The notes under the pieces are model-generated. The model saw only the letters and a program-made list of their open reading frames with translations. It was not told where the DNA came from and did no database searches. From IMG/VR virus record IMGVR_UViG_3300032053_000002, positions 1-64,000 of that record: DNA of 64,000 nucleotides. The stretch is one strand, 5' to 3'. Positions 1-53,138 of this stretch are shown here, in pieces. A program made the translations under genes and the position numbers. The stretch's first letter is position 1, and each line of letters begins with the position of its first letter.

Positions 1-324
1 CGTGAATGTCTCCTTTTATTAGTGCAGCGGAAGCTGTTATCTGACCGTTACTCCAAAGAATTAATTGTGCGTTTGAACTAGATATTGAACCGGAACTTAC
101 ACTAAAACCGGCAATATATCCAGAACCAGTTGCTATTATATTTGCAGCGTATAAGTTATTAGCGTGAATGTCTCCTTTTATTAGTGCAGCGGAAGCTGTT
201 ATCTGACCGTTACTCCAAAGAATTAATTGTGCGTTTGAACTAGATATTGAACCGGAACTTACACTAAAACCGGCAATATATCCAGAACCGGTTGCGATTA
301 TATTATTTGCATATAAATTAACCG
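1..324 (-). repeat. 162-bp (54 aa) tandem repeat; further copies at ~3100-3420
   Basis: cgtgaatgtctccttttattagtgcagcggaagctgtt... starts at 1 and again at 163. Confidence 0.9.
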
Positions 325-3300
325 CGTGAATATCACCACGAATCAAAGAGTTTGATGCGGTTATTTGACCGCTGTCTCCGCGAAGAATTAATGTAGAATT
401 TGCACTAGTTATGGCATTAGATGATATTGAAAATCCACCTATTGTACCGGCCGTAGCGTTTAAAGAACCCGTGATTTGAAGAGTTGATATTCCCGGATTC
501 CAAGCCATTCCATTATTAGCATCTCCGACAGAAAAATATCCGTTATCAAACCAGTGATTATATCCGTCGATCCACGAACCGCTTCCCTGAATGAATTGCG
601 GGAATCGGCTGCTCGCGCCAACGTTTTTACCGAGTCGCATTCCACCAGCATGAACTACTCCAGTGAATGAACCAGTTGTCGCAGTTACTTTCCCAGAAAA
701 ATATCCGTTTTCAGTATAGATACCATATCCAGGAGAAGTATCGCCATAAAGATACGCCGGTGACAATCCTTTTAAGTCCCCAATTCGTGCTTTCAATAAT
801 ACATCAAATACCCCGCTACCTGTTCTTTCTATTATATCCATAAATGGTGCGTATGGGTCTCGGGGATTAGCATTTAATTTAATAAATCCGCTCCCACTTA
901 TTCCAGTGGAAACCAGAACCTGACCCGGCTCATAAGAACCGGTTACAGACCCAGTATAATTGACTAACGGGATTCCCAACGAATCGACTAATTGCGGATG
1001 TTGCCATACTTTGTTGCTTTGATAACTTCTGGAAACGTAAAGTTTTCCATTAAACGTGTTGGAATTGTCGCTATCAAAAGACCAACTTGCCACTCTTACA
1101 TATTCAGTAGAAAATCCGGTATCACTTACTTTTTTAACAAGAATAATTTCGCCGACTGCCCAACCACTTGCATTTTCTACGCTCCACGTAGCAAAAGTTG
1201 GGTTAGTAGGATTCGAACTTGATGTCACACTTCCACTCAATACAGTAGAATTTGCAATCCACAATTCGCCTCCGACTGCATTAACACTTTCTTTTTCAAA
1301 AACCGTGGTTCTTAACGTTCCTCTAATTTTCGCATTCTCAAATTCTGCGAAACCGTTGAAATCGCTAGTTATTCGCCACCCAACCAAATTACTTACATAA
1401 TTAGCAGATTGAATTGTTCCATTACTGTTGATAATTATATTACTTGCGGTTATTTGAGCATTATCAAAATACCAACCGCCAATTTTATTTGTTGACCCCA
1501 ATTGAAATGATGTATTACCCCCGCCAACTCCTATAATACCCCAATTGGTTGCGTCAGTATAATGCATCTTAACATAGTCTGTCGCAGAACTGCTTACTTG
1601 AATGTATCTATTGAAAGAGTTTAATTCTACAGACCCAGATGATAAAGAAGTAGGCGAGATTCTCCAGCCACCGATTAAACCGCTTCCAGTTGCTATTATA
1701 CTGTTAGCGTATATGTCCCCGCGAATCAACGCTGACGATGCAGTTATTTGACCACTATCACCACGAAGAATCAAAGAATTATTTGAACTAGAAATAGCGG
1801 TTGGTGTTATTGAAAATCCACCTATTGTACCAACAGTAGCATTTAATGAGCCGGTAATTCTTAATGTTGTTGCTCCAGGATCCCACGATAATCCGCTACT
1901 AGCATCTCCGACAGAAAAATATCCGTTATCAAACCAGTGATTATATCCATCAATCCATGAACCTGTGCCTTGAACGAATTGTGGAAATCTGCTGCTTGCA
2001 CCGACATTCTTTCCTAGTAACATTCCACCGGCATGGACTCTACCAGTAAATGAACCGGATGTGGCGACAATCTTTCCAGAAAAGTATCCGTTTTCAGTAT
2101 AGATACCATGTCCCGGACTAGTGTCACCAAAAAGTAATGATGGCGACAATCCAGTTAAATCTCCAATTCGTGCTCGTAGCCGTACATCATATACTCCACT
2201 ACCTGTTCTTTCAATTATATCTATGTATGGAGTATACGTGTCGCGAGGATTGGCATTCAATTTAATGTAACCGCTTCCGCTCAATCCAGTAGAAACTATT
2301 ACCTGTCCTGGTTCATAAGAACCGGTTATAGAACCACTGTCATGCACCAGTGGCGGGCCTCCAGGAATTACTAGTTGGGTATGTGCCCATTGAATATTGC
2401 TTTGGTAACTTCTGGAAACATAAAGTTTTCCGTTAAACTTTGTCAACCCATCTGATTCGAGCGACGAACTTACTATTTTTACATATTCTGTAGTGAATCC
2501 AGTATTGCTTACTTTTTTAACTAACGCGATTTCTCCAACTGCCCAACCGCTTGCATTATCCACACTCCAAGTAGCAAAAGTCGGAGATGTTGGGTCTGCA
2601 CTAGCAGTTAAACTACCGCTCAAAACCGTAGAATTAGCTATCCATAGTTGTCCACCAACAGCATTTACCGTTTCTTTTTCAAATACAGTCGTTTTTAATG
2701 TTCCGCGAATTTTAACGTTTTCAAATTCTGCATAACCATTGAAATCACTAGTTATTCGCCAACCGGATAAATCACTGACATAATTAGCGGTTTGCAAAGA
2801 ACCGTTGGAATCTATAATTATATTACTTGCGCTTATTCTAGTATTATCAAAAAGCCAACCGCCAATTTTATTAGCAGAACCGAGTTGAAACACCGTAGCA
2901 TTTCCGCCAACTCCTAATAAACCCCAATTGGTTGCGTCAGTATAATACATCTTTGTATAATCAGTTACAGAAGAACTTACCTGAATGTATCTATTGAAAG
3001 AGTTTAATTCTACAGACCCAGATGATAAAGAAGTAGGCGAGATTCTCCAGCCACCGATTAAACCGCTTCCAGTTGCTATTATACTGTTAGCCGTTATATC
3101 ACCTTTTATTAAAGCAGCGGAAGCTGTTATCTGACCGTTACTCCAGAGAATTAACTGCTGATTTGAACTAGAGATTGAACCGGAACTAATACCAAATCCG
3201 CCAATAATTCCGCTTCCAGTTGCGATTATATTAGCAGCGTATAAATTATTGGCGTGAATGTCGCCCTTTATTAAAGCGGCGGAAGCTGTTATTTGACCGT

Positions 3301-6300
3301 TACTCCAGAGAATTAACTGAGCATTCGAACTAGAAATTGAACCGGAACTTACACTAAAACCGGCGATATATCCAGAACCAGTTGCGATTATATTATTTGC
3401 ATATAAATTAACCGCGTGTATATCTCCGCGAATTAAAGCATTGGAAGCGGTAATCTGACCAGTGCTTACTATCTGACCGGTACTCCCGCTTAAATATACC
3501 GCACCATTAACACTGGTAAGAGCATCAGCCGCGATTTTCCACCCGCCAATTGTTCCAACTACGGCATTCAATGAACCTGAAATCTGTAACGTTGCCGTTC
3601 CAGGATTCCAAAACAACCCGCTATTAACATCTCCAACAGAAAAATATCCGTTATCAAACCAGTGGTTGTATCCGTCTATCCACGAACCTGTGCCTTGAAC
3701 AAATTGCGGAAATCTACTGCTTGCACCGATGTTTTTACCAAGCCGCATTCCACCGGCATGAACTACTCCCGTGAATGAACCGGTTGTCGCAGTTACTTTC
3801 CCAGAAAAATATCCATTTTCAGTATAGATACCGTGTCCTGGACTGGTATCTCCATAAAGATATGCCGGCGACAGTCCAGACAAATCTCCAATTCGAGCCC
3901 TAAGTAATACATCGTACACCCCGCTTCCGGTACGTTCTATTATGTCTATGTATGGAGTATATACATCTCTCGGGTTAGCATTTATTTTGATATAACCGCT
4001 TCCACTTATTCCAGTAGAAACAATTACTTGGCCTGGTTCATAAGAACCGGTTATAGAACCACTGTCATGAACTAGAGGCGGCCCGCCCGGAATTACCAGT
4101 TGTGGATGTGCCCATTGTAGATTGCTTTGGTAACATCGTTGTACATAAAGTTTTCCGTTAAACTTGGTTGAACTATCAACGTCGCGAGACGAACTCATTA
4201 TTCGAACATATTCAGTAGAAAATCCGGTATCCGTTACTTTTTTAACGAGCGCGATTTCTCCAACTGCCCAACCACTCGCATTTTCTACGCTCCAGGTGCA
4301 AAATGATGCGACGGATGGGTCTGAACTGGCAGATATGCTTCCACTTATAACAGTAGAATTTGCTACCCATAATTGTCCTCCGACCGCATTAACCGTTTCT
4401 TTCTCAAATACGGTCGTGCGAAGAGTTCCTCTAATTTTCGCATTTTCAAATTCTGCGTAACCATTGAAGTCGCTAGTTATTTTCCACCCAGTCAAATCAC
4501 TAACATAATTGGACGTTTGAATAGTTCCATTACTGTTCAGAATTAAATTATTACTATAAATTGTCGAAGGCGAAATTGACCATCCACCAATAGATGCAGA
4601 TCTAAATAATGCGTATCCATCTGTATCAATGGAAGAACTTGCGTTTTCTCTGGTTGATGGAGAACCCGCAATAGTTGCCGGAGTACGTATAGAATTAGCA
4701 GTAACAGAACCTAAAATAGTAACATCTTCAGTAATCGTTCCACCAGTAAAGAGTACATGGCTCGCGGTTATATCTCCGTCCTTACTCACAAAAAAGTGAG
4801 AAGAAGAAATCGTTCCGTCGCCAGACAATACAAGCGTGCTTCCCGGAGACGATAAAGACGCACTATTTATATTCCACCCACCAATAGAACCGGACATGAA
4901 ATGAACATACCCTTGTTGAGTTATCGCGGCTCGATAATAATTTCCAGAATTCGGATCATAATACGCACTAGCCGTTTCGTCACCAGTTATTCCACCAAGC
5001 GGAACTAAAATTCTATTTGCTTCGATACCACCAGAAAAATAACCATCCGTTGCGTAAATAGAACCAGTAATTTCAAGACGACCGGTATCAGTCCTAAAAC
5101 GAAGCGCGTGCGTTTCGCCTCTTCCAGTAGACGGATTTATCGCAGACGCACTTCCGCCATGAAGTTCAAGTCCAATTCCCCGATATAGTCCGGTACTTAA
5201 ATCATCCAACGCCGAACCGCTCCAAATCATGAAACCGCCCGGACCGGTTCCATCTGTCGCTCTATAATATCCTTGATATAACACATCTTTCAAATATGAT
5301 GCGCGAGTTCCGTCCGATGCGCCAACCGAAGTAAGTTGAATTCCGCCATCAATTCTATTACCAACAAAAATTGAACCGGTTAATAGATTGTCTTCACCGG
5401 AGATATAAACATTTCCTCCTTCATAAAATACTTCAGATGATGTAGCAAACAGAGTCGCTCTATCTCCTCGATAAGTGTAAAACTCCGTCTTAAATTCTAA
5501 AGTATCTTGCCTTTGCCAAGAAGGGGTCGGAATAGTGAATGACGCCAAATCAGGAGAAAATCCGGTTTCTTGCGAAACTCTCAATGAAACATCACTAATA
5601 TGCCAGTCGCCAGAGTCAATAACAAATCTAATGTGCCCATCCCCGTCTTTGTCGGCTATAAAGTTGATAGAAACTTTACCAAAACTTCTTTCGGCTACAT
5701 TATCCGTATCCGTTAAATTTATTTCGCGAATACGTTTTCCATTTCCGGAAAACTCGATAAATCCACCACCCGCCGCCATTGAGGTTGGAAGCTCAGTAAA
5801 TGCGGATCCGGACACAAAAATTAGTAATCTTGCGCTAGGAACGTCTATCATGCGCGTGATGGCGACTCTTTTATATTTTTTTATTGCGTATAACTTTACG
5901 TCTAGAGAATACTCGACATCTTTGTAAAAATTCGTTTTCTGAAGCGGATAAACGGTATAATAATCGCGATACAATCTAATACCCGAACTACCCGTAACAT
6001 ACATAGCGTCTAATAATTTTTCACTGGTATGTGTTAAGGATGGGCCGGTCATACTAGAAGTTGACGATAATACGGACGCCGTCCAGAAACTATCTATTGT
6101 ACCCTGACCATAAAAATATCCATATCGTTCATTTGTATTTACAGATTCAGAATCAATCATCAATTCTTTGGACTCAAGTACTGATTCGCCTATCAATTCA
6201 TAATCCCGTTCAGAACCAACGGATTTAGCATATAATTTTATTGAGTAGACATCTCCAGAAAAAACACTCATATTCGCAACAGTTGCTTTAACAAAAGACC

Positions 6301-7168
6301 TATAATTTTCTGTTAGAGAATATGTAGGCGCGGTTTCATACACTAAAGTATATGGACTCGCATTAAAATTTTTGGAGCCATAAGTATTAACACCCATTAT
6401 CGTACTAGTATACACTTGTGGATAAAGTCTATAATCTTCCGCAGTTGGTAAATATGGATTTTGTGCAACCGCCGTATATGCATTAGTAATAGATCTAATT
6501 CTAGTTACATACGATTGACTATTTCCATATACAACATCAGGTATTGGAACTGTTAATAATCCACCAATCATTTGATAATTAAATTGAGCCCCCGCCCACA
6601 TTGATATATTATAGTTGGAACCGACCGCTCTACCTATTACAAGGCCTGAACTATAAGTAATTGTTTCTGGACTAGAACTGGTGGAGTATGTTCGGACTAG
6701 ATATGGAGTAAAAAGTTCTTCGGTGATTACTCTAGGAAGTGAATAAAATCTAATCGGCGAAGAATTTCGCAAAGATGGGTTGACCATAATGCTTTTTTGC
6801 CATCTGATATTGGGAATTCCTTGCCATTCAATTGGAACATTTTTAGCTTCACCGACAACAGTTATAAGACCTTCACCATATTCTTCATCGGGATATACAT
6901 AAACGGAAACAAAACGAGACGCTCCTTCAACATAGTCGGGATATTCAGAATAGATTACTTTTCCGTTTTCATTTAAAACTTCCACATGAACTTCGGAATT
7001 AAGTTTTAATAAATCAGAACCATTTATACGAAACGCGGTTTTCCCAGCGGGGAAAATCTCAGGAATGTCAAATATTCTAAAATATCTAGAATTTGAATCA
7101 TTGTCAATTATGTATACAGGTATTCGCTCCAACCCAACATAATCGTTGTGTTTTTTCAAAACGGACAT
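1..7168 (-). CDS. Giant repeat-containing tail fibre/virion structural protein (>2380 aa, truncated by window edge)
   Basis: Not in the ORF track. ATG at 7168 follows GGAG RBS and ATATTTATA motif (MSVLKKHNDYVGLERIPVYII...). The same frame was open wherever I translated it (7168-5000, ~4550-3550, 1-100); I did not check every codon. Gly/Ser/Thr-rich beta-type repeats (VFEKETVNAVGGQLWVANS, RARIGDLSGLSP, NGQITASAALIKGDIHA). Confidence 0.85.
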   Translation of the reverse strand, partial: MSVLKKHNDYVGLERIPVYIIDNDSNSRYFRIFDIPEIFPAGKTAFRINGSDLLKLNSEVHVEVLNENGKVIYSEYPDYVEGASRFVSVYVYPDEEYGEGLITVVGEAKNVPIEWQGIPNIRWQKSIMVNPSLRNSSPIRFYSLPRVITEELFTPYLVRTYSTSSSPETITYSSGLVIGRAVGSNYNISMWAGAQFNYQMIGGLLTVPIPDVVYGNSQSYVTRIRSITNAYTAVAQNPYLPTAEDYRLYPQVYTSTIMGVNTYGSKNFNASPYTLVYETAPTYSLTENYRSFVKATVANMSVFSGDVYSIKLYAKSVGSERDYELIGESVLESKELMIDSESVNTNERYGYFYGQGTIDSFWTASVLSSTSSMTGPSLTHTSEKLLDAMYVTGSSGIRLYRDYYTVYPLQKTNFYKDVEYSLDVKLYAIKKYKRVAITRMIDVPSARLLIFVSGSAFTELPTSMAAGGGFIEFSGNGKRIREINLTDTDNVAERSFGKVSINFIADKDGDGHIRFVIDSGDWHISDVSLRVSQETGFSPDLASFTIPTPSWQRQDTLEFKTEFYTYRGDRATLFATSSEVFYEGGNVYISGEDNLLTGSIFVGNRIDGGIQLTSVGASDGTRASYLKDVLYQGYYRATDGTGPGGFMIWSGSALDDLSTGLYRGIGLELHGGSASAINPSTGRGETHALRFRTDTGRLEITGSIYATDGYFSGGIEANRILVPLGGITGDETASAYYDPNSGNYYRAAITQQGYVHFMSGSIGGWNINSASLSSPGSTLVLSGDGTISSSHFFVSKDGDITASHVLFTGGTITEDVTILGSVTANSIRTPATIAGSPSTRENASSSIDTDGYALFRSASIGGWSISPSTIYSNNLILNSNGTIQTSNYVSDLTGWKITSDFNGYAEFENAKIRGTLRTTVFEKETVNAVGGQLWVANSTVISGSISASSDPSVASFCTWSVENASGWAVGEIALVKKVTDTGFSTEYVRIMSSSRDVDSSTKFNGKLYVQRCYQSNLQWAHPQLVIPGGPPLVHDSGSITGSYEPGQVIVSTGISGSGYIKINANPRDVYTPYIDIIERTGSGVYDVLLRARIGDLSGLSPAYLYGDTSPGHGIYTENGYFSGKVTATTGSFTGVVHAGGMRLGKNIGASSRFPQFVQGTGSWIDGYNHWFDNGYFSVGDVNSGLFWNPGTATLQISGSLNAVVGTIGGWKIAADALTSVNGAVYLSGSTGQIVSTGQITASNALIRGDIHAVNLYANNIIATGSGYIAGFSVSSGSISSSNAQLILWSNGQITASAALIKGDIHANNLYAANIIATGSGIIGGFGISSGSISSSNQQLILWSNGQITASAALIKGDITANSIIATGSGLIGGWRISPTSLSSGSVELNSFNRYIQVSSSVTDYTKMYYTDATNWGLLGVGGNATVFQLGSANKIGGWLFDNTRISASNIIIDSNGSLQTANYVSDLSGWRITSDFNGYAEFENVKIRGTLKTTVFEKETVNAVGGQLWIANSTVLSGSLTASADPTSPTFATWSVDNASGWAVGEIALVKKVSNTGFTTEYVKIVSSSLESDGLTKFNGKLYVSRSYQSNIQWAHTQLVIPGGPPLVHDSGSITGSYEPGQVIVSTGLSGSGYIKLNANPRDTYTPYIDIIERTGSGVYDVRLRARIGDLTGLSPSLLFGDTSPGHGIYTENGYFSGKIVATSGSFTGRVHAGGMLLGKNVGASSRFPQFVQGTGSWIDGYNHWFDNGYFSVGDASSGLSWDPGATTLRITGSLNATVGTIGGFSITPTAISSSNNSLILRGDSGQITASSALIRGDIYANSIIATGSGLIGGWRISPTSLSSGSVELNSFNRYIQVSSSATDYVKMHYTDATNWGIIGVGGGNTSFQLGSTNKIGGWYFDNAQITASNIIINSNGTIQSANYVSNLVGWRITSDFNGFAEFENAKIRGTLRTTVFEKESVNAVGGELWIANSTVLSGSVTSSSNPTNPTFATWSVENASGWAVGEIILVKKVSDTGFSTEYVRVASWSFDSDNSNTFNGKLYVSRSYQSNKVWQHPQLVDSLGIPLVNYTGSVTGSYEPGQVLVSTGISGSGFIKLNANPRDPYAPFMDIIERTGSGVFDVLLKARIGDLKGLSPAYLYGDTSPGYGIYTENGYFSGKVTATTGSFTGVVHAGGMRLGKNVGASSRFPQFIQGSGSWIDGYNHWFDNGYFSVGDANNGMAWNPGISTLQITGSLNATAGTIGGFSISSNAITSANSTLILRGDSGQITASNSLIRGDIHAVNLYANNIIATGSGYIAGFSVSSGSISSSNAQLILWSNGQITASAALIKGDIHANNLYAANIIATGSGYIAGFSVSSGSISSSNAQLILWSNGQITASAALIKGDIH
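440..4540 (-). repeat. Three ~1 kb near-identical modules within the giant tail gene (~4540-3560, ~2815-1820, ~1430-440)
   Basis: Highly similar DNA and protein modules at offsets of ~1725 and ~1386 bp. The three antisense shadow ORFs 1056-1400, 2493-2735 and 4164-4460 are paralogous. Confidence 0.9.
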
Positions 7169-7264
7169 AAAAAAATCTCCAATAATATACATATAAATAT
7201 AAAAAAATAAATGTTTTTATCGCTCTTTTTTATATTTATATAAAGGACAATAAAGGAGAATAAA

Positions 7265-12432: not shown

Positions 12433-13263
12433 TTATTTATTTTTAATTCTTCGTTTATTGGATTCTCCAATTGCATTACTCCCTGCTTTTGACATATCAT
12501 GTTTTTTTCCTTTTAATGCTAAACTTAATTTAATTTTTGTTTCTTCTTTGCATGGACTTCTTTTTCTTCCAATAGCTAGTTTTCTAATTTTATCCTTTGT
12601 TTCTTCGGTTTGTTTTCTTCCCTTGTTTAGTCCTGGGTGTTTCTTTCCATAATTACCGTTATTTCTGCCCACCTGCCTGTTTGGGTTTTTTCTATAATAT
12701 TCTAATTGAGAATTTCTTATTTTGTTTTTGGTTTCTGCTGACCGTTTTTGGCCTAACATAGACTTTCTTTTCTTTTCTAATATCTCTAGTGTCTTGACTT
12801 CGCCGTATTTTTCGATATATGAAAGTCCTTTTTGCCACCTACTTTGTTTTTCTTTTGATTCGTTTTTATGTTTTTTTCCAAACATAGGATTTTTTTCACC
12901 GGTTCTATTTTCAGATTGTTTTTCTTTTATTTGTTTTGCTTTACTTTCACCAAAACATTCTTCATAAGTTTTACCTTCCATACCATTACCACCATGCCCA
13001 CCATTAGCAATGTTGTAATTGCCAAATGTAATCGAACTATTAAATTTTTTTATATAATATTTTTCTTTTTTATCTAATTCCATTCTGTCTTTACATTCGC
13101 ATAATAATTCAACTTTAAAATTATTTGTTCCATATTTTTTAATAGATTTATTTAATATTTTTCCAGACCCATAATAGTTTTTATCAAACTTCCCTCTCTT
13201 TTGTCCGATATAAATTTTATTATTAATTAAATTTATAGTTTTATAAATATATCCAATATACAT
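12433..13263 (-). CDS. GIY-YIG homing endonuclease with NUMOD3 repeats (Seg-like)
   Basis: GYIYKTINLINNKIYIGQ...YYGSG...E..YI...YNI; repeated NPMFGKKH, SAETKNKI, TEETKDKI. Confidence 0.9.
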   Translation of the reverse strand: MYIGYIYKTINLINNKIYIGQKRGKFDKNYYGSGKILNKSIKKYGTNNFKVELLCECKDRMELDKKEKYYIKKFNSSITFGNYNIANGGHGGNGMEGKTYEECFGESKAKQIKEKQSENRTGEKNPMFGKKHKNESKEKQSRWQKGLSYIEKYGEVKTLEILEKKRKSMLGQKRSAETKNKIRNSQLEYYRKNPNRQVGRNNGNYGKKHPGLNKGRKQTEETKDKIRKLAIGRKRSPCKEETKIKLSLALKGKKHDMSKAGSNAIGESNKRRIKNK

Positions 13264-13932: not shown

Positions 13933-14841
13933 TTATAAATCTAATCTGACAACAATGGTAAGTGGTAAATCGGGGTCGTTTCGAACCGGCTGGGCAAGTT
14001 TGCCAATCGCTAATAGATTCAGATAGCTATCATATAAACCAACCGTAGTAACATATGGGGCGAAATTAGAACCAGTAACGAATCGGAGAGGTTCAGTAGT
14101 GTATAAGGAACGACTAACTCTTGCGCTCGGATTCATAGTCATATTAAATTCACCTTCTTTTACAATGCAAATTGCTTCTATTTCATGTATCTTTTCCGTT
14201 CCGCGAAATTTAACCGTATAAGTATTCGACCCAGTTCCAAAACTTAAATAATTATGGGGAGAAGAACCTGTATTCGTAATAACCATATTTCCGTGTTCAT
14301 AAAAAACATTACCTAACGTATATGTCGCCTTGTTCGCGGCGAAACTTGCCGAACTGTCCGCATCATATAGATTTCCGTATCCGTCGTCCACCAGAGTAAA
14401 TCCAACCGTTACGTCTTCCAGGTAAACCGATTTCGGTTTTATCGTATACCCAAAAAGATTTTGCGGAACCGAAATAACTTTACAACTATCGTGGAAATTT
14501 CTATACATCAATCCCTTTCCGCTTAATCCAAAGTTAAAATATGGTTCATAAAATTTATTGACTGACCACGAACCGGTTTCCGCCGGATTTGTATAAGAAC
14601 CCGTATATTCAGAAAGACTGGTTAAATTATAATACAGATGTTTTACACTGTCATAAAGAGTTCTGTTATAAATGTCGCCCGAAGCGGTTGGTTCTAACCA
14701 CCAATAGAATGCGGAATTCTCCACTTTCATCGCATACATTACTAGTGCGATACCATCGGCCTGAGTAAGTACCCATTCCTTGTATGCGTAAATTTCCCTA
14801 TAACTAATATCGTCGCCAGATAATTCTTTGTATATCGCCAT
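13933..14841 (-). CDS. Virion structural protein, paralog of 14977-16215
   Basis: Shared C-terminus YVTTVGLYD...LLAIGKL.QP...VRLD (tail-collar-fibre-like). Confidence 0.65.
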   Translation of the reverse strand: MAIYKELSGDDISYREIYAYKEWVLTQADGIALVMYAMKVENSAFYWWLEPTASGDIYNRTLYDSVKHLYYNLTSLSEYTGSYTNPAETGSWSVNKFYEPYFNFGLSGKGLMYRNFHDSCKVISVPQNLFGYTIKPKSVYLEDVTVGFTLVDDGYGNLYDADSSASFAANKATYTLGNVFYEHGNMVITNTGSSPHNYLSFGTGSNTYTVKFRGTEKIHEIEAICIVKEGEFNMTMNPSARVSRSLYTTEPLRFVTGSNFAPYVTTVGLYDSYLNLLAIGKLAQPVRNDPDLPLTIVVRLDL

Positions 14842-14976: not shown

Positions 14977-16215
14977 TTACCAATCCAATCTTACTTTTAT
15001 CAGTGCCTCGCGATCAAAAGCTTTTAATATTGGTTGACTTATCTTCGCAACTGCTAATAGTTGGTTCGAATCATCATATAATCCAACCGTCGTAATATAA
15101 ACTTTCGGATCCCCGATAAAAGTTGATATTTTTATTGAACCGTCAGAAGATGTATAAAACGTCGGGTTGTTACTAAAATTATATTCTCTATTTTTTACTC
15201 TAACAAAATATGTCGTAGAAGAAACGACTTCTTCGTTCCTTGCGGCGAAATACGAACCTGATTGAAGCATTCCAACAAGTTGCCGATGATTATTTTGCGC
15301 AGATCCAGAATCCGACGTAACAAAAGATAATCCGGCCAAATGCCCCGCCAAAGTTAATGGACTAAGAATTATAATTCCTCTATCAGGATAGAACAACCCA
15401 AATCCGCCCGGTGTTTCACTGGCCGCCGGTGTGAGCACTCCATTTGCAATACTACCGGTAACTACGTTATATCTTCTACCAGATACACCAGATAATTTAT
15501 CAAAATTGTCGCCACTATCATCTATCAACTTTACAGTATTCGCACCATATTTTAACCACAATTCCCAGTTACCAGGATCCATTTTTTGTTTCAATCTTGC
15601 TCTATTGATGTTTATCGCTAAAATCTGATCACTGGAATAACTTCCCGCAAATGTAAATTTTGTATCTTCCGGATCCAATAAAATATTTCTATATTGCGCA
15701 TAAATTGCTTTAGTAGGCTCTTTGGAAGTATTTTTGGTTGTTACGTTTGGATAACCGCCACCGTTGATTTCGCCGTATGCAACTGAAAATTGAACTTCCG
15801 CACTATCGTCAGTATTCGGATCTAAATTATAAACATCATAATACCAGTCGCCCGTGCTGCCAGATTGAGATGTTCCTATATAAAAATTGGCTAAACTTCC
15901 AGTGTCTCCACTCCACATTCCGGTTGTAACTCTTCGCGTCATATTATCTACCACATCATCAGTAGTAAAATGTGTATAGGTTTTCATTACTGTTGCCGTT
16001 GGTGTACCACCCGCTGCCCCCGCAACTCGGGTTTGAGATGGGTATCTTTGTAATATCAAATTTCTCGTAGCGGTATCCAACGCTGCCCACTCCGCCGCAG
16101 TTAGCACAGCCCCGGACATTAGTTGATTACCTCTAGCGGTGCCAACTACAGATCCCAAACCGGCTTTCATGAAATAATCATCTAATAAAGTTAAAAAATC
16201 AGTCGTCATTGCCAT
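14977..16215 (-). CDS. Virion structural protein (tail/baseplate-associated)
   Basis: YITTVGLYDD.NQLLAVAK...VRLDW C-terminus; lies in late operon. Confidence 0.65.
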   Translation of the reverse strand: MAMTTDFLTLLDDYFMKAGLGSVVGTARGNQLMSGAVLTAAEWAALDTATRNLILQRYPSQTRVAGAAGGTPTATVMKTYTHFTTDDVVDNMTRRVTTGMWSGDTGSLANFYIGTSQSGSTGDWYYDVYNLDPNTDDSAEVQFSVAYGEINGGGYPNVTTKNTSKEPTKAIYAQYRNILLDPEDTKFTFAGSYSSDQILAININRARLKQKMDPGNWELWLKYGANTVKLIDDSGDNFDKLSGVSGRRYNVVTGSIANGVLTPAASETPGGFGLFYPDRGIIILSPLTLAGHLAGLSFVTSDSGSAQNNHRQLVGMLQSGSYFAARNEEVVSSTTYFVRVKNREYNFSNNPTFYTSSDGSIKISTFIGDPKVYITTVGLYDDSNQLLAVAKISQPILKAFDREALIKVRLDW

Positions 16216-16232: not shown

Positions 16233-17151
16233 TTATGTTGCGGTTGAACCACCCGCGAAAATTCTATCCGTATATATCGTCACCGGAACTGTTCTAGTTA
16301 CTCCCGTATCGTTTCCGATAATGGTTATAGAAGTTTGCACATAAGTTGTCGTATAAGGAGAAACATCTTTACTAATCAGTGTAAAAGATTTTCCAACTTT
16401 TACTATTGATTGATTAAGTTCGGTGTCACCCAAAAACGATGGAACTACGGCGACAACTGACTGGTTGGTTTGTTCTTTTACCTGCAAGTCCGCATAGTTT
16501 GAATTATGCAATATTGCGGTATACCCATATGCGTCGCCTTCGTAATATCTAGTTTTTGGCTGGATAACAACTTCGTCTCCCTGTTTTCCCAATTGAATTG
16601 ATGCGAATCCAATTGTAAGAAGAGGCATTTTTGTTGTCGTTTTTGGTAGTGTAATAAGTTTATATCTCATTGTTTGAGTTTCATCGGGACACGCCTCTAA
16701 AACGGGCATCCCTTCAATCGCCGAACCATAATAGTCCGTTCCCAATGGATGCGATTCGTCCCACAAAGTATAATCAACTTCATCATCAGCCAAAGCAAAT
16801 TTTGTTATGCCTAACTTGCCGCCTTTCGATAAAACCTCACGTCCCTTTTTTGTCAGTCATTTTGTTATCTTATTAGTTTTTTATCTAATAACTCTTACGA
16901 TTTCTGTTTTTCGTAAGTTCGGCATATATTTTCAACCACTTGGGTTGTTGGACACTCTTGGAAAGATTATTGTTGGATCTCACTTTCTATGCTCTACACT
17001 ACTTGTTCTACATTATCCCGAACAAGTTAGCACGGTGTTAGCATTTCAGCCTTTCACCGTTTTTGCCCAAATTATTACCCAGACATTGCTATCTGGGACG
17101 ACACTACTTTATCGCCTCCACAACCGTGGTGGTGCTGGTTAAATATCCCAT
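16233..17151 (-). CDS. Intron-split virion protein, exons 17151-17111 and 16857-16233 (221 aa spliced)
   Basis: Splicing gives in-frame MGYLTSTTTVVEAI|LTKKGREVLSKGGKLGITKFALADDEVDYTLWD...; GAGGAG RBS before ATG 17151. Confidence 0.88.
16858..17110 (-). ncRNA. Group I self-splicing intron (253 nt, no internal ORF)
   Basis: 5' splice site after U paired to G in P1 (GGCGAU/GUCGUC); P2 CCCAGAUAGCAAUGUCUGGG; P3 UUGGGCA/UGUCCAA; P4 ACGGUG/CACCGU; P7 G(A)GCAUA/UAUGCC; terminal omega-G; removal restores frame. Confidence 0.9.
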
Positions 17152-17899
17152 AAAGCATCTCCTCAACTTGTTTGGTCATCTTTTCAAAATTATTGTGTAC
17201 TTTCGAATGACAACTTCTACATAAATAAATTAAATTATTCTCGTTATTATTTCTCTTATCTTTATCTATATGATGTAAGCACAAATCATTATTGATGGCG
17301 CATAATAAACACCCATTTTTTTGCCTTTCCAACAGATGTTCTCTAAATTCTTTATTATAAAATTCATCTCCATATCTATCATTTTTATTCGGATTCCATA
17401 GATAATGGTTTTCTCCAGACCATTTTCTTATCCGTTCATCATTAAACCTAGATTTATTTTTATTCCAAATATCAGGATATATTCCTAACATTTTTTTAAT
17501 ATTTTTCGTTTCGTTTGATTTGGAAACTATTTTATTATAAATATCATCCACTTCGGTTTTATTTCGTGTATTCACATAATGATTCTTTGATAAAATACCA
17601 TTTTGAGATTGTTGTTTTTTAGTTTCTCTCATTTTATCCATTATATTATTAAAATATTTCGGATTTTCTTTTATCCAACGTTTTCTTCCTGCGGATATGT
17701 TTTTTATATGAGAATCTGATTTTTTAACTCCCTTTGTTACCGTTGATACAGATTTACTAATTTTACTAACTATCTTTTTATATTCTTCAGACTCTTTATT
17801 ATATTTTAATTGCCAACTACCACCACCACTATGACCATATAAATATCTATTGGTTTCTTTAACAACTTCTTTCCCGCAACCACATTCACAAAGTCTCAT
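17075..17899 (-). CDS. HNH homing endonuclease
   Basis: N-terminal CECGCG; C-terminal CLLC...HHID.DKRNN...NLIYLCRSCHSKVH. Confidence 0.88.
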   Translation of the reverse strand: MRLCECGCGKEVVKETNRYLYGHSGGGSWQLKYNKESEEYKKIVSKISKSVSTVTKGVKKSDSHIKNISAGRKRWIKENPKYFNNIMDKMRETKKQQSQNGILSKNHYVNTRNKTEVDDIYNKIVSKSNETKNIKKMLGIYPDIWNKNKSRFNDERIRKWSGENHYLWNPNKNDRYGDEFYNKEFREHLLERQKNGCLLCAINNDLCLHHIDKDKRNNNENNLIYLCRSCHSKVHNNFEKMTKQVEEMLYGIFNQHHHGCGGDKVVSSQIAMSG

Positions 17900-17949
17900 G
17901 ATATTCTTCCTTTTATCTTATCTATAAATATAAATATAATAAATTTATT

Positions 17950-20900
17950 TTATTCTACTAAAATTTTACTAGGCCCCATATCCGTTGTCATCAATCTATT
18001 CGGATTAGTATAAAATACTTCTACAGGTTCTTTTCCATCAATTGATGTTTCGGTAGTATTTAATGTCCCTGCGTAGTATAATCTATTTCTAAGACTTCTA
18101 GCTTCAGACGTCCACGAACCGGATGGAAACATATCCTGAATTGGATGAATCATTTCTATATACCCATCATAAATGATCGAATCTTCAAATGCAAAATTTA
18201 TTGCGGAATTGTACTCTTCAAATGCTCCTTCATATGTTGGATCGATTTGAAGTATTTCGGATTCATACTTTGGAAGAGTTGAACTCATAGTACAGTAATT
18301 ATTAACATAGATATTAGTTTCTTTATCTATTCTCTCATGCACTAAATCTCGCCATTTTATCTTATGGCGTTCCAATATGGTTGGTTCTATCAGAACTCCT
18401 ATTACAGGTTTCGCCCGAGCAGGAATCAATGATCGCAGTTGATTAAAGAACGATGCGTCATAGTGTTTAAGAACGCGAATAAATTTATTAAAATCTGGGC
18501 GACTTTTATATTTTCTCCAGTACGCCAGTGACAACTCATCCAAATCATCGTATGAATCATTAAATCTGTCGCGAGGGTCGCCAATATATCCGCTTAAATC
18601 AAGTCCCGCATAAGTAGCTATTATGTCTCTGTTGATAGATTCTATGGGCGAAAAATAAATACCTAATTTCGGAGAATCCAATGGCGCTCTATCAAAAGAA
18701 GATTTTTCCACTCTTTTCGCCACACTTAAATGCCCATATTCTATTTCATTATCTTCTAACCTGATTTTAGTATTTATGTACCTGCCGCCCCCCATTTGTA
18801 TAGTAAGAGCTGCAAATTCTTCTGTTCTCGGAGAATAACTAATGTGGCTACCAAAATTGGTAGCGGTTCCGACGGTCGTCCACGATTGATTTGCTTTTAT
18901 GTCACTAACGGTCGTAGTTGTTGCGTGATTTACCGGATTGTCAAGTGAATATCGTAATACCAAATCATAATAGGTGCGAGTGGGCGTATTGGAATTATAT
19001 GATTTTGGCCATCGCACATGATTATCAAATGCCGATTCCGAAAGAGCGGATTGATACAGTTTAAATTCTTGAAGCGAACCGGTAAATTGCACTCCCCACG
19101 TATAACCAGCATCTCCACCGATATAAAGAGTTGATGTATTAGTCCACGATGTAAGAATATTAGCATTGGTTGTTAAATTCGCCGATGAATGCCATATAAT
19201 TCTGTCACTTTCCGCTTTCTTCACAAATAATTGAAGTTGGTTCGCCGCGGCGGATGCGCTATACCTAACCATAACAGAATTAAACTCATTATCATAATAT
19301 CGGTATTTATCAGTTTTTATTGAACTCACTGTCGCGCCATTAGTAATAATAAATTCCACAGCTCCATATCCAGACCCAGAGTCTAAAAGTCTAATTGCCC
19401 AATCATCCGCAGAAACTAATGATTGCGTCGGCTTTCCGCGTCCTAATCCGACACTACTTATCGAATCGTAAAGTGTTGGAGCAGACGCAAAGCGAAACTC
19501 TATCGTATCCGGTTTTTTACTTTGAGTGAGATCGCTCCAGGAAAATGAAATACTCTGACTTCCTTCAAGATTTAATGCGTACACAAAATCATCAAATATA
19601 TATGAAGATTTTTGGTCTATTTCAGAATAATCTCTAGGATCCGGGCCTCCATATTCACGAATTGTTAGCAAAGAAGTTGGAATTCCATAGCATGCTAATA
19701 ATGCACGGATAGAACGTTCCGTTCCTTTGGTTTTTAATAGATATGATAAGTTATTTAATATTCTTCGCCAGATTTCCTTTGATACATTTTCATGGGACAT
19801 ATATTGATATTTATCACCACTGGAACCGCTCACTGACCCGACATAATAACTTCCCGTTGCATCATATCCAAACGCATATCTCCATAACTCCGAATTATCT
19901 CTACCATTAAATAAATCAAACCCTAAAGATTTGGCGACATGATAAGTTAAATCTTTCGCCATCCCTTCAAAAATAGATTCATCCCGATTATGGATTTTGG
20001 TTAAATGTTTTGTATATGCCCAAAACATATCAAAGTATTGCCCCATCATATAAATGAATGCAAGATAATCCCCGTTATTTTCGTCGACGGTCAGATAATC
20101 AGGAATATTGCTAACAAAGTTGTAAATATTATCCTTATCATATTCTTGCGCAATTGTTAATTGGTCTTCATACCAGGAAGTCACGTTTGAAGAAGTTAGC
20201 CGATATAAAATAAATGGCTTTGTTTTATTTTGCTTCGGCCATTCATTTATCGCGTTAGTCAAATATTTTCCAGTTATCGTAGAACCGGAATATTGCGATC
20301 CGGATGAATAATATAAATGCCGTTCATAGGAATCAAGCCCATTAACTAAAACTCTTTTTTTGTTTTCATAATTTCCGATACTGGAAGACGCGATTGCTGA
20401 GCCCGACGAGCTCGTATTTCGCACTTTCAGTATTTCTTCATTATATGCATCTATTAGTTCCATCTTGTACTTGAAGTTGGCGAGTCTTTCTTCCGCCGAA
20501 CCAAAATGAACAAATTCAGAATAATCTCCATAATTTATATTTAACGAAATGTCGCCTACTTCCGGATTTGATGCGCTTATAAATTCGTCTAATAATGCCT
20601 GAGATGTTGACGGATATGTTGAAAGCAAAGTATCCCACGTCTCATATCCAGTTGAACGTCCCGTTATTCCTGCAACATTTATATCCCAGTTGGCCGGTTC
20701 AAGGATCAGATAATCTTCTTCTCTTTCGGCTTCGAGTAAAAATGCTTTTTCTATAATGGAATAAGTTATTTTTTTAGAAACCCATAATTGATCGTTTTCT
20801 TTAAAATCTTGCGGAAGAGGCTCGTATAATTTTAATACTATTGAATTGGGATATTCTGGGTATTTTACAGAATCCTGCGCCCAATTTACTATAAAATAAT

Positions 20901-21750
20901 TTTTACTATTTCCAAAGTTAATATAAAAGTCCGCCGACCTATTCGAAGGACTATAAAAAACAAGGGTTTTGATAAATTCTTCCCACCGAATATAAACACG
21001 CATCGTTGTACCAGACTGATCAAATCCTTCGCCAAAAACAATAGTGAATACTTTTTCGGCGACACTTGACAATCTTTGTTGATCTTCATACTGAAGAATA
21101 TCTTTCGCTTCTTTTTTTGCATTATTGTAAACTTGATTAATTGTTTCTCCGACCAACGTAGTAAATTTTGCAGATAATTCTTCGTATTCAGAAGATTCGA
21201 CATCCGAGAAAAAATCTTTTGCGGTGTATGTGTTTAATTTATTTCCAAACAATCTTGCGAAAGATTTTGTTAGTATTCCATTTCTTCCAAAATTAACAAA
21301 GTCAGAATTAAATTGAATATTATTATTTTCATCCGTTGTTTTTACTGGTAATACTCTAATTTCTTTTCGCGATGGAGAAATTTCTTCTATAAAAAGTTTA
21401 TTATCGTTAAACCCACCCAAACTATTTCTGAAAAATTCGTATACTACTCGATATTGCCCACGTTGGAAGCCGAATAAACGTAAATCGTTCCCGGGTTTTA
21501 AGATTATTTTATTTGGCGAAACTTTGTCATACATTTCATAGGGAGGGGGAACAATCGCCCACTGAAGAAAATTATCGTCCATATCATAGACGGATAACTC
21601 TACAGTATCTTTTCCATCGGAATAATTATAGGTTTCTTCGCTATCCTTATTGAAATAAAATAAAGTTAGGTCTTTTGTGTCAATTCGCTCGCCACGAACC
21701 TGACCAACGGATTCTTTTATTTCATTATAATTTTTAAAGTCTTTTATCAT
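17950..21750 (-). CDS. Large baseplate/virion protein (P2 gpI-like segment and LamG-like region)
   Basis: LLKTKGTERSIRALL motif; FTGSLQEFKLYQSALS LamG-like motif; position in baseplate operon. Confidence 0.6.
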   Translation of the reverse strand: MIKDFKNYNEIKESVGQVRGERIDTKDLTLFYFNKDSEETYNYSDGKDTVELSVYDMDDNFLQWAIVPPPYEMYDKVSPNKIILKPGNDLRLFGFQRGQYRVVYEFFRNSLGGFNDNKLFIEEISPSRKEIRVLPVKTTDENNNIQFNSDFVNFGRNGILTKSFARLFGNKLNTYTAKDFFSDVESSEYEELSAKFTTLVGETINQVYNNAKKEAKDILQYEDQQRLSSVAEKVFTIVFGEGFDQSGTTMRVYIRWEEFIKTLVFYSPSNRSADFYINFGNSKNYFIVNWAQDSVKYPEYPNSIVLKLYEPLPQDFKENDQLWVSKKITYSIIEKAFLLEAEREEDYLILEPANWDINVAGITGRSTGYETWDTLLSTYPSTSQALLDEFISASNPEVGDISLNINYGDYSEFVHFGSAEERLANFKYKMELIDAYNEEILKVRNTSSSGSAIASSSIGNYENKKRVLVNGLDSYERHLYYSSGSQYSGSTITGKYLTNAINEWPKQNKTKPFILYRLTSSNVTSWYEDQLTIAQEYDKDNIYNFVSNIPDYLTVDENNGDYLAFIYMMGQYFDMFWAYTKHLTKIHNRDESIFEGMAKDLTYHVAKSLGFDLFNGRDNSELWRYAFGYDATGSYYVGSVSGSSGDKYQYMSHENVSKEIWRRILNNLSYLLKTKGTERSIRALLACYGIPTSLLTIREYGGPDPRDYSEIDQKSSYIFDDFVYALNLEGSQSISFSWSDLTQSKKPDTIEFRFASAPTLYDSISSVGLGRGKPTQSLVSADDWAIRLLDSGSGYGAVEFIITNGATVSSIKTDKYRYYDNEFNSVMVRYSASAAANQLQLFVKKAESDRIIWHSSANLTTNANILTSWTNTSTLYIGGDAGYTWGVQFTGSLQEFKLYQSALSESAFDNHVRWPKSYNSNTPTRTYYDLVLRYSLDNPVNHATTTTVSDIKANQSWTTVGTATNFGSHISYSPRTEEFAALTIQMGGGRYINTKIRLEDNEIEYGHLSVAKRVEKSSFDRAPLDSPKLGIYFSPIESINRDIIATYAGLDLSGYIGDPRDRFNDSYDDLDELSLAYWRKYKSRPDFNKFIRVLKHYDASFFNQLRSLIPARAKPVIGVLIEPTILERHKIKWRDLVHERIDKETNIYVNNYCTMSSTLPKYESEILQIDPTYEGAFEEYNSAINFAFEDSIIYDGYIEMIHPIQDMFPSGSWTSEARSLRNRLYYAGTLNTTETSIDGKEPVEVFYTNPNRLMTTDMGPSKILVE

Positions 21751-36118: not shown

Positions 36119-36140
36119 TCAATTCTCCCAATACAATTAG

Positions 36141-36489
36141 TGGAGTCGGCGGGGAATCGAACCCCGCGTCCGAAATAGTTCCAAAATCAACATCTACAAT
36201 TATAGTTTGTTTTTATTTTATATCGCGAAAACAAACAAAACATGATAACAACTTTCTTTTAATTCTATGTTGTGAAAGAATGGAGGCCTGACCGAATGGT
36301 CATTCCGGCTACCAGTTGATATGACACCGCTTTTCCCACTATCAACGTCATGGAGCGATGGCGACTTAAATAGTTTTAAGCCGCGTAGGCAAGTGAATAG
36401 TTGCCATTTATTTTTGTTTTTGGTTTTTAACGTCACCCCGACGAATTGCAGTTAATCTTCTACCTACCCCGTCGAATCCGTGCGACCCC
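36141..36489 (-). ncRNA. ssrA: tmRNA; tag (A)GNYSLAYAA at 36405-36376
   Basis: 5' GGGGUCGCACGGAUUCGAC; 3' GCGGGGUUCGAUUCCCCGCCGACUCCA; G3.U alanine pair; 349 nt; tag ORF ends AA-stop after AUAAAU. Confidence 0.95.
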
Positions 36490-50983: not shown

Positions 50984-50988
50984 ATCTG

Positions 50989-51017
50989 AATATACAAAAT
51001 AAAACCATACCAGTCAA
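50989..51017 (-). promoter_or_regulatory. sigma70-type early promoter
   Basis: TTGACT-N17-TATATT. Confidence 0.8.
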
Positions 51018-51020
51018 CCG

Positions 51021-53123: not shown

Positions 53124-53138
53124 TTTTTATATGTACCG

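What the first reader, a model, noticed from the sequence alone, without database searches (positions are those of the whole stretch)
16233..17899. Hidden group I intron in a virion gene, with an adjacent HNH gene that reads through exon 1 into the intron
Seen: a 253-nt ORF-less intron with P1-P4 and P7 pairings and omega-G splits codon 14 of a structural gene. The ORF track therefore shows only a truncated product. The upstream HNH ORF has its own late motif, overlaps all of exon 1 and stops inside the intron. Splicing changes its C-terminus from ...CGGDKVVSSQIAMSG to ...CGGDTDKKGT. Known: most phage group I introns are in DNA-metabolism genes, and free-standing endonucleases can mobilise neighbouring ORF-less introns (collaborative homing). 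Inference: the HNH cuts intron-less alleles at this junction, and ribosomes translating the HNH across P1 could modulate splicing.
Basis: partly seen in the sequence, partly recalled or inferred. Interest (0 to 1): 0.68.

Follow-up and report, generated by a model that had tools for sequence, protein, structure and literature searches.

The report
Hidden self-splicing intron with HNH partner
A 253-base group I intron that standard RNA-family scans miss splits a conserved tail-module gene of a 293-kb phage, and it always travels with the same neighbouring HNH nuclease gene: a well-documented new example of a known kind of selfish DNA partnership.

Summary
On the minus strand, exon 1 (17151..17111, MGYLTSTTTVVEAI, with a GAGGAG ribosome-binding site) and exon 2 (16857..16233) are separated by 253 nt (17110..16858). 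Joining them gives a 221-aa protein whose N-terminus matches more than 5000 uninterrupted homologues (MGYLDN..VEAILTKKGRE).

The insert is a group I intron:
- It has P1 with a U.G pair at the splice site, P10, and a terminal G.
- The P3/P7 pseudoknot and P4, P6, P7.1, P8, P9 and P9.1 covary across 16 relatives (98% of cells paired against 31-44% in slid controls).
- A model built from the family hits Twort orf142 introns 2 and 3.
- Rfam RF00028 misses the whole family.

The 274-aa HNH ORF (17899..17075) overlaps exon 1 and stops at intron nt 34-36.

Every HNH homologue with DNA available (eight lineages) lies upstream of the same gene, split at the same site. None of 67 intron-less loci has one. 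Intron-bearing alleles are scattered on the gene tree, and an HNH-less, intron-bearing allele exists in metagenomes. This fits collaborative homing, but cleavage is untested.

The read-through into the intron is specific to this lineage: a stop codon was lost. A regulatory role is therefore unsupported. No RNA data exist. Verdict: a new member of a known kind.

The parts
17923..17938 (-). Two overlapping copies of the promoter-like motif TATATTTATA, 24-39 nt upstream of the HNH start.
   Evidence: The motif occurs 11 times in the window against 1.15 expected, 9 of them on the coding strand. It also lies upstream of other genes. It is kept in the HNH-less allele.
17075..17899 (-). Free-standing HNH endonuclease ORF, 274 aa. 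Its last 25 codons cover exon 1 and intron nt 1-36.
   Evidence: ORF list, PHROG HNH families, homologues P0123-P0134.
17180..17919 (-). Segment replaced by 22 nt in a natural HNH-less allele. This marks the extent of the HNH insertion or deletion.
   Evidence: read laying found a joint from 17179 to 17920 in contigs of runs X5 and X2. In X5 the record also covers 17079-17179, that is exon 1 plus intron nt 1-32; in X2 the joint has 29 letters on its shorter side.
17159..17164 (-). Ribosome-binding site GAGGAG of the tail-module gene, inside the HNH ORF.
   Evidence: Sequence. It lies 7 nt before the ATG.
17111..17151 (-). Exon 1: 13 codons plus 2 nt, MGYLTSTTTVVEA+AT.
   Evidence: It matches the conserved N-terminus of the homologues.
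16858..17110 (-). Group I intron, 253 nt (window position = 17111 minus intron position). Helices: P1 exon GGCGAU with intron 9-14; P10 intron 5-8 with exon 2 ACUG; P2 14-19/28-33; P3 41-46/158-163; P4 51-56/74-79; P5 60-62/69-71; P6 84-91/103-110; P7 117 and 119-123 / 185-190 with bulged A118; P7.1 124-128/146-150; P8 164-168/174-178; P9 194-200/211-217; P9.1 220-226/235-241; terminal G253.
   Evidence: Covariation. Model R1 scores 130.6 bits on this stretch, which was one of the sequences R1 was built from, and hits Twort introns. Orthologous introns lie at the same site in relatives.
16233..16857 (-). Exon 2, including the stop codon. The spliced CDS is 666 nt and encodes 221 aa.
   Evidence: Translation and spliced product.

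Best explanation
Window 16858-17110 (minus strand) is a self-splicing group I intron of the phage IA type, related to the Twort orf142 introns. It sits after the second base of codon 14, inside the most conserved motif (AILTKKGRE) of a baseplate/tail-fibre-module gene of a 293-kb phage.

How it works (inferred):
- The HNH ORF, exon 1, the intron and exon 2 are transcribed together from the TATATTTATA motif upstream of the HNH gene.
- The intron folds. Its guide sequence GUCGUC pairs with exon GGCGAU, giving a U.G pair at the splice site.
- Free guanosine attacks that site. The terminal G253 then docks in P7, and the exons are ligated with help from P10.
- The product is mRNA for a 221-aa protein.

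The HNH partner (inferred):
- The upstream 274-aa HNH protein is a free-standing homing endonuclease.
- It most likely cuts intron-less alleles of this gene at or near the insertion site during co-infection.
- Repair from the intron-bearing genome then copies the HNH gene and the intron together (collaborative homing). The intron protects its own genome by splitting the target.

The read-through of the HNH ORF through exon 1 into the intron is a lineage-specific by-product of a lost stop codon. It is tolerated because it ends in J2/3, before the catalytic core.

Shown: the split gene, the fold with covariation, homology to proven introns, the HNH-intron association, and the HNH presence/absence polymorphism.
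Inferred: splicing in vivo, the HNH target, and co-conversion.
For: Split gene:
- Homologues are uninterrupted and match exon 1 joined to exon 2.

Group I anatomy in the sequence itself:
- U at -1 pairs with G9; the guide is contiguous with P10; G253 is terminal.
- J3/4 is AAAA; P7 has a bulged A next to a G-C pair.

Covariation:
- RNAalifold found compensatory changes in 25 of 35 pairs.
- Over 45 pairs that include the P3/P7 pseudoknot, 98.1% of 695 cells pair, against 31-44% when partners are slid.
- 31 of those pairs show double changes, against 7-14 when slid.
- Pair 117:190 is G-C, A-U or C-G in different members.

Homology:
- blastn finds the element splitting helicase, terminase, tape-measure and capsid genes in other phages.
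- Model R1 hits Twort orf142 introns 2 and 3 at 31-33 bits, E about 1e-5 to 1e-6.
- Those Twort introns are proven self-splicing IA2 introns (PMC10136302).

Orthologous introns:
- They lie at the identical site in L128, L129, L133, L135, L136 and L138, at 113-141 bits with R1. For L128, L129, L133 and L135 the identity to the window's intron was measured at 70-79%. L132 shows exon 1 and the intron start before its contig ends, with no R1 hit.
- P10 changes with the exon 2 sequence: UAGU/ACUG here, UUAAU/AUUAA in L133, L135 and L138.
- All six alleles tabulated codon by codon (the window, L128, L129, L133, L136, L138), and L135, carry GCG ATA at the junction, against 1 of 66 intron-less alleles.
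- All have an in-frame stop early in the intron.

HNH link:
- Association; tree; HNH-less allele.

The arrangement is known as collaborative homing (PMC3984707, PMC10448857).
Against: - There is no RNA evidence: no RNA run holds the locus, so splicing is inferred.
- Rfam RF00028 gives no hit at E up to 10 on this element, its genome or ten relatives. It does hit the Twort introns at 64-101 bits, so the family is divergent.
- Only one hairpin (P7.1) is seen where IA2 introns have P7.1 and P7.2.
- P5 is short and poorly supported.
- The HNH cleavage site is unknown.
- The perfect HNH-intron association could also come from linked vertical descent with repeated joint loss.
- No wider co-conversion tract is seen beyond the GCG ATA junction.
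Confidence: 0.85

Rival explanations
1. The intron is real and splices, but the HNH is not its homing partner. The HNH would be an independent free-standing homing endonuclease gene occupying an intergenic hot spot and cutting elsewhere, for example in the upstream 1266-aa gene or in the empty intergenic site. Alternatively it replaced an earlier intron-encoded endonuclease (the 'HEG turnover' idea). The tight association would then reflect 41-nt physical linkage and shared descent.
For: - The same slot holds an unrelated DUF559/MTES_1575 endonuclease-like ORF in the closest intron-less relative, L064.
- A GIY-YIG/NUMOD3 homing endonuclease gene lies three genes downstream.
- An HNH-less but intron-bearing allele exists.
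- PMC10448857 proposes endonuclease-gene turnover as an origin of such loci.
Against: Homologues down to 35% identity are found only beside intron-bearing alleles, in eight lineages with DNA and one more by gene layout, and in none of 67 intron-less loci. An endonuclease with an unrelated target should sometimes sit next to intron-less alleles.
Confidence: 0.25
2. HNH translation through exon 1, P1 and P2 is a regulatory device that times or limits splicing.
For: - The HNH ORF physically covers the 5' splice site, the guide sequence and P2, and stops at intron nt 34-36.
- Translation is known to influence phage group I splicing (PMC3984707).
Against: - The overlap is not conserved. There is a 14-25 nt gap in L133 and L135, and only a 14-17 nt overlap in L128 and L129.
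- The window's extension is explained by the loss of one stop codon.
- The HNH gene itself is dispensable in natural variants.
Confidence: 0.12
3. The gene is a pseudogene disrupted by a dead intron remnant. Alternatively it starts downstream, either at the TTG at 16793 or at the ATG at 16860 followed by a shift in the A6 run, and is never spliced.
For: - Gene callers output the 186-aa TTG product.
- The ATG at 16860-16858 followed by GACAAAAAAGGG would come into frame if one A were removed.
Against: - Every core pair is intact in the window's own sequence.
- The 14-residue conserved N-terminus, with a strong ribosome-binding site, lies exactly 253 nt upstream.
- The A13-I14-L15-T16 columns are invariant in the family.
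- The ATG at 16860 has no ribosome-binding site and is not conserved: L128 and L129 end the intron in ATTG.
- Contigs from three other samples are identical across this region.
Confidence: 0.04

Closest known systems
Staphylococcus phage Twort orf142 introns 2 and 3 (self-splicing group I, subgroup IA2; the ribozyme has a crystal structure)
   Same: - Similar size, no ORF, and located in a virion gene (orf142 is a tail tube protein, PMC11878797).
- Parallel 3' core: P7 with a bulge, GAAC, a P9 hairpin, a P9.1 hairpin and a GAUAACA-type tail ending in G.
- Model R1 hits both introns.
   Different: - Sequence similarity is confined to the 3' core.
- Twort is detected by Rfam RF00028 at 97-101 bits, while this family is not detected at all.
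- Only one hairpin lies between P7 and P3' here.
- Twort's introns are not paired with an upstream free-standing HNH at this locus.
Collaborative homing loci: cyanophage S-PM2 psbA intron with F-CphI, T3/T7-like DNA polymerase intron with a free-standing endonuclease, and ICP1 terminase intron with a T5orf172 endonuclease gene
   Same: [quoted passage not shown] The proposed co-mobilisation works by cutting intron-less alleles at the insertion site (PMC3984707, PMC10448857, PMC6083498).
   Different: - The host gene is a tail or baseplate-module gene of a jumbo phage.
- The endonuclease family is different (HNH with a CxCGCG N-terminus).
- The intron lies only 41 nt into the gene.
- In this lineage the HNH ORF runs through exon 1 into the intron.
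- Cleavage specificity is untested here.
Unannotated or mis-annotated relatives of the same intron family in public phage records
   Same: They share 67-75% nucleotide identity and the same covarying helices. Examples:
- Bacillus phage PJN02, RecD-like helicase.
- Staphylococcus phage SA2, terminase.
- crAss-like cr7_1 and cr131_1, terminase.
- crAss-like cr118_1, helicase.
- Arcanobacterium phage TPWB06, tape measure.
- Dulem virus 41, capsid.

   Different: They sit in different host genes. Several carry endonuclease ORFs inside or at the 5' end of the intron rather than a free-standing upstream gene.

Membership tests
Group I self-splicing intron | P1 helix between the 5' exon end and an internal guide sequence, with a U.G pair at the splice site | tested here: met
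   Exon GGCGAU pairs with intron 9-14 GUCGUC, with U(-1).G9. The same pairing holds in the orthologues, and G(-5).U13 becomes G-C in L129.
Group I self-splicing intron | Terminal guanosine at the 3' end, and P10 between the guide region and the 3' exon | tested here: met
   G253 is terminal here, and a terminal G is seen in all six orthologues with both splice sites read (L128, L129, L133, L135, L136, L138). P10 is UAGU/ACUG here and UUAAU/AUUAA in L133, L135 and L138, following the exon sequence.
Group I self-splicing intron | Conserved core P3-P9 with the P3/P7 pseudoknot and the P4-P6 domain, supported by covariation | tested here: met
   98.1% of cells paired against 31-44% in slid controls, and 31 of 45 pairs with double changes. 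P5 is weak.
Group I self-splicing intron | Guanosine-binding P7 with a bulged nucleotide next to a G-C pair | tested here: met
   A118 is bulged. G119-C189 is invariant in 16 of 16 sequences. Pair 117:190 covaries as G-C, A-U or C-G. Guanosine binding itself is inferred.
Group I self-splicing intron | Match to the curated model Rfam RF00028 (a detection aid, not a defining property) | tested here: not met
   No hit at E up to 10 on the element, its genome or ten relatives. The positive control, Twort, scores 64-101 bits.
Group I self-splicing intron | Detectable homology to an experimentally proven group I intron | tested here: met
   Model R1 hits Twort orf142 introns 2 and 3 at 33.3 and 31.1 bits. 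This is modest and limited to the 3' core.
Group I self-splicing intron | Self-splicing with a guanosine cofactor; ligated exons in RNA | not testable with these tools
   No RNA run holds the locus.
Subgroup IA2 | Both P7.1 and P7.2 between P7 and P3' | tested here: inconclusive
   P7.1 is strongly supported (5 pairs, 16 of 16 sequences paired). It is followed by a largely conserved single-stranded stretch, CCAAGAGU here (C151, A152, G154, A155 and G156 invariant), and no second hairpin is seen.
Collaborative homing system | Free-standing endonuclease gene next to an ORF-less intron in the neighbouring gene | tested here: met
   The arrangement recurs in eight further lineages with DNA.
Collaborative homing system | Endonuclease and intron co-occur and are patchily distributed among related genomes | tested here: met
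   No HNH homologue occurs in 67 intron-less loci. Well-supported branches of the tree force at least 3 changes of state.
Collaborative homing system | The endonuclease cuts intron-less alleles at the insertion site, and the intron-bearing allele is immune | not testable with these tools
   This needs a cleavage assay.
HNH homing endonuclease | HNH (beta-beta-alpha metal) motif | tested here: met
   14 PHROG HNH families match, best E 6.5e-8. The motif CLHHID..N..NL..LCRSCHSKVH is present. Pfam HNH_3 is below its cut-off (E 0.2).

The most novel reading that the evidence does not exclude
The HNH, exon 1 and intron form one co-evolving mobile cassette that has spread among diverged jumbo-phage lineages by targeting the invariant AILTKKGRE-coding site of a tail-module gene. 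The intron family, invisible to Rfam, would be a widespread and largely unannotated class of phage group I introns that silently splits structural and replication genes in many public phage genomes. In this lineage, HNH translation into P1 and P2 would add a real coupling between endonuclease expression and tail-protein splicing.
Probability: 0.15. Interest if true: 0.65.

Novelty: new member of a known kind. Interest (0 to 1): 0.45.

Why it matters
1. Annotation. The public gene call for this protein is truncated: 186 aa instead of 221 aa.
   - The same Rfam-invisible intron family splits terminase, helicase, capsid and tape-measure genes in deposited phage genomes.
   - Some of those genes are recorded there as two fragments, others as a truncated gene.
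   - A dedicated covariance model would repair many annotations.

2. Biology. The locus offers an unusually clean comparative series for the still thinly documented idea of collaborative homing. The series contains:
   - the window's lineage plus eight further lineages with the endonuclease and the intron at one site;
   - many empty alleles;
   - one natural allele that has the intron but lacks the endonuclease.
   The host gene here is a virion gene rather than a DNA-metabolism gene.

3. The overlap of an endonuclease ORF with a 5' splice site is a natural construct for testing how translation affects group I splicing.

Tried and rejected
- Rfam scans at the gathering threshold and at E up to 10 on the window, the locus, the whole genome and ten relatives found no group I hit. 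This is not evidence of absence of a group I fold: the helices covary and model R1 reaches Twort. It does show that the family is divergent, because RF00028 detects Twort.
- A megablast search of the locus against phage records found nothing.
- Pfam and PHROGs gave no family for the tail-module protein.
- The AlphaFold model has a poor N-terminal 90 residues and a generic Ig-like or cohesin-like C-terminal sandwich. Foldseek TM-scores were only 0.2-0.3, so no function can be taken from it. 'Virion gene' rests on synteny with the baseplate and tail-fibre genes of Flavobacterium phage immuto.
- No RNA run holds the locus. Read laying showed no intron-less allele of this strain.
- Model R1 found no second copy in the genome and no hit in T4 or SPO1.
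- I considered a frameshift or alternative start at the A6 run and rejected it (see rivals).
- I looked for a wider co-conversion tract in the exons. Only the GCG ATA junction stands out.
- P1 of the Bacillus phage PJN02 relative could not be resolved. Endonuclease ORFs lie between its 5' exon and the ribozyme core.
- The count of structure pairs was not used. The counts and slid controls were computed in Python instead.
Full report
**Setting.** The window is the first 64 kb of a 292,723-bp virus record, 91% complete by CheckV. Its DNA is held by sediment metagenome runs. Nearly all genes lie on the minus strand. The finding sits in a tail module:
- a 1266-aa ORF at 21750..17950;
- the HNH ORF at 17899..17075;
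- the gene in question;
- two ORFs of 412 and 302 aa.

In Flavobacterium phage immuto the homologue of the gene in question lies between baseplate wedge genes and tail fibre or spike genes. That synteny is the only basis for calling it a virion gene. Pfam and PHROGs give nothing. The AlphaFold model shows only a generic Ig-like C-terminal sandwich.

**Observation.** Read on the minus strand:
- A strong ribosome-binding site, GAGGAG (17164-17159), precedes the ATG at 17151.
- The frame reads MGYLTSTTTVVEA plus AT, then stops two codons later in the unspliced RNA.
- 253 nt further on, after a G at 16858, the sequence A CTG ACA AAA AAG GGA opens the frame that runs to the stop at 16233.
- Joining the two parts gives 221 aa, MGYLTSTTTVVEAILTKKGREVL....

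More than 5000 database proteins of 216-226 aa match this family. The closest begin MGYLDNSTVTVEAILTKKGRE. All 62 related viral loci, and five loci from other assemblies, read straight through this point. A13, I14, L15 and T16 are invariant columns. So the insert sits in the most conserved motif of the protein, and the public gene call (186 aa, P0003) is truncated.

**What the insert is.** Rfam gives no group I hit, even at E up to 10. The sequence nevertheless has the full anatomy (intron numbering 1-253):
- The 5' exon GGCGAU pairs with GUCGUC (9-14), with U.G at the splice site.
- UAGU (5-8) pairs with the first bases of exon 2 (P10).
- P2 is followed by J3/4 AAAA, then P4, P5 and P6.
- The stretch GUAGAGCAUAG, which resembles the classical R element, forms P7 with AUAUAUGCC. 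A118 is bulged next to the G119-C189 pair.
- One extra hairpin, P7.1, follows. Then come P3' (the pseudoknot with P3), P8, P9 and P9.1.
- The tail GAUAACAAAAUG ends in G253.

A blastn search with short words found the same element in 58 phage records. There it interrupts these genes:
- a RecD-like helicase in Bacillus phage PJN02;
- terminase in Staphylococcus phage SA2 and in two crAss-like phages;
- a helicase in cr118_1;
- a tape measure gene in Arcanobacterium phage TPWB06;
- a capsid gene in Dulem virus 41.

More copies turned up in IMG/VR contigs.

Covariation in an alignment of 16 members:
- RNAalifold on its own recovered P6, P7, P7.1, P8, P9 and P9.1, with compensatory changes in 25 of 35 pairs.
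- My count over 45 pairs, including P3 and P4, gives 98.1% standard pairs against 31-44% when partners are slid by 1-3 columns.
- 31 of those pairs show double changes, against 7-14 in the slid controls.

A covariance model of the 3' core (R1) finds one copy in this genome. It also hits Twort orf142 introns 2 and 3. Those are proven self-splicing IA2 introns (PMC10136302) in what is now known to be a tail tube gene (PMC11878797). RF00028 does detect the Twort introns at 64-101 bits. Its silence on this family therefore marks real divergence, not a general blind spot. I file the element as a group I intron of the phage IA type. Assignment to subgroup IA2 stays open, because only one hairpin is seen between P7 and P3'.

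**The HNH gene and its link to the intron.** The 274-aa ORF matches 14 PHROG HNH endonuclease families and carries the motif CLHHID..NL..LCRSCHSKVH.

Its database homologues have 35-63% identity. I fetched every one I could. In L128, L129-131, L132, L133/134, L135, L136 and L138 the homologue lies directly upstream of the same tail-module gene. A further contig shows the same layout, judged by gene arrangement only. Where the contig reaches far enough, the gene is split at the identical site, GCG AT|A, by an orthologous intron of 248-256 nt (lengths measured for L128, L129, L133 and L135). L132 ends soon after the intron start. R1 scores on the complete orthologues are 113-141 bits.

Further comparative points:
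- tblastn finds no HNH homologue in any of the 67 intron-less loci.
- On a tree of 156 alleles, the intron-bearing ones are scattered among intron-less nearest relatives. Well-supported branches force at least three changes of state.
- All six intron-bearing alleles tabulated codon by codon, and L135, carry GCG ATA at the junction, as P1 requires. Only 1 of 66 intron-less alleles does.
- P10 differs between lineages in step with exon 2.

Laying metagenome contigs on the locus showed identical HNH-plus, intron-plus sequence in three other samples. In runs X5 and X2 it also showed an allele in which 17180-17919 is replaced by 22 nt. In X5 the same contig keeps the promoter-like motif, exon 1 and the intron start. 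So the HNH gene is a separable insertion.

The slot is a hot spot for such genes. The closest intron-less relative, L064, carries a DUF559/MTES_1575 endonuclease-like ORF there. A GIY-YIG/NUMOD3 homing endonuclease gene lies at 12433-13263.

All this fits collaborative homing as described for S-PM2, T3-like phages and ICP1 (PMC3984707, PMC10448857). The cleavage site is untested, and linked descent with joint loss is not excluded.

**The read-through.** But the HNH stop sits in different places in the relatives:

| Locus | Where the HNH ORF stops |
|---|---|
| L133 | 14 nt before the tail-gene ATG |
| L135 | 25 nt before the tail-gene ATG |
| L128 | TAA formed by tail-gene codons 4-5 (CTT AAC) |
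| L129 | TAA formed by tail-gene codons 5-6 (GAT AAT) |
| Window | TAA in J2/3, intron nt 34-36 |

The window's allele reads ACC AGC at codons 5-6 (T5 S6), which removes that stop. The frame then runs on to the TAA in J2/3. The extension is therefore specific to this lineage and ends before the catalytic core. Every orthologue also has an early in-frame stop in the exon 1 frame, a feature seen as favouring folding (PMC3984707). I find no support for a conserved regulatory role.

**The motif.** TATATTTATA occurs 11 times against 1.15 expected, mostly upstream of genes on the coding strand. The two copies before the HNH gene remain in the HNH-less allele. The motif is therefore most simply the tail gene's promoter, now driving both genes. 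A second, sigma-70-like class (TTGACT, 17 nt, TATATT) precedes other genes. 'Late' is an inference.

**Verdict.** The group I intron is strongly supported by anatomy, covariation and homology. The homing partnership is supported comparatively but unproven. The translational-coupling idea is unsupported. This is a new, well-documented member of a known kind. It has practical value because the intron family escapes the standard Rfam model.

Noticed in passing
window 36138-36489 (-): The phage genome carries a full-length tmRNA gene. Rfam scores it at 140.9 bits, and ARAGORN reads the tag peptide GNYSLAYAA*.
   Followed up: partly
window 52815-52895 (-): An 81-nt tRNA-like match in Rfam (37.4 bits) that ARAGORN does not call. 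It may be an unusual or degenerate tRNA.
   Followed up: no
window 12433-13263 (-): A second free-standing homing endonuclease gene lies three genes downstream of the split gene. It has a GIY-YIG domain plus NUMOD3 and matches phrog_314 at E 1.8e-34. It also has TATATTTATA upstream.
   Followed up: partly
window, e.g. 50984-51020, 53112-53170, 54870-54930, 58497-58581 (-): Two promoter-like motif classes are present. A sigma-70-like class (GGTTGACT, about 17 nt, GTATATT) precedes one set of genes, and TATATTTATA precedes another.
   Followed up: partly
window 2-7192 (-): A giant ORF of at least 2397 aa runs off the window start. It contains 162-nt (54-aa) tandem repeats at 1-304 and 3105-3460.
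   Followed up: no
window 13933-14841 and 14977-16215 (-): The two ORFs downstream of the split gene share a C-terminal motif (TTVGLYD..LLA..K..P..L.I.VRLD). They look like paralogous tail-fibre or baseplate modules. Pfam and PHROGs have no family for them.
   Followed up: no
L108 (Bacillus phage PJN02, OM634653.1 4584-7843): This is the closest BLAST relative of the intron. It splits the Walker A motif (GGGGMGK|S) of a RecD-like helicase. Two ORFs ('mobile intron protein' and 'endonuclease') lie between the 5' exon and the ribozyme core. I could not find a convincing P1 there.
   Followed up: partly
L109, L111, L113, L114, L115, L116 (public phage records): Members of this Rfam-invisible intron family lie in or at terminase, helicase, tape-measure and capsid genes. 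Several of these genes are deposited as separate or truncated CDSs.
   Followed up: partly
L097 (IMGVR_UViG_3300045988_166862) 1612-1817, 6090-6277, 6858-7046: One 159-kb viral contig carries three copies of the intron family within 5.5 kb.
   Followed up: no
L064 4318-4974: The closest intron-less relative has a DUF559/MTES_1575 (Vsr-like) endonuclease-like ORF in the same intergenic slot that the HNH occupies here. Flavobacterium phage immuto has a 403-aa 'nucleic acid binding protein' in that slot.
   Followed up: partly
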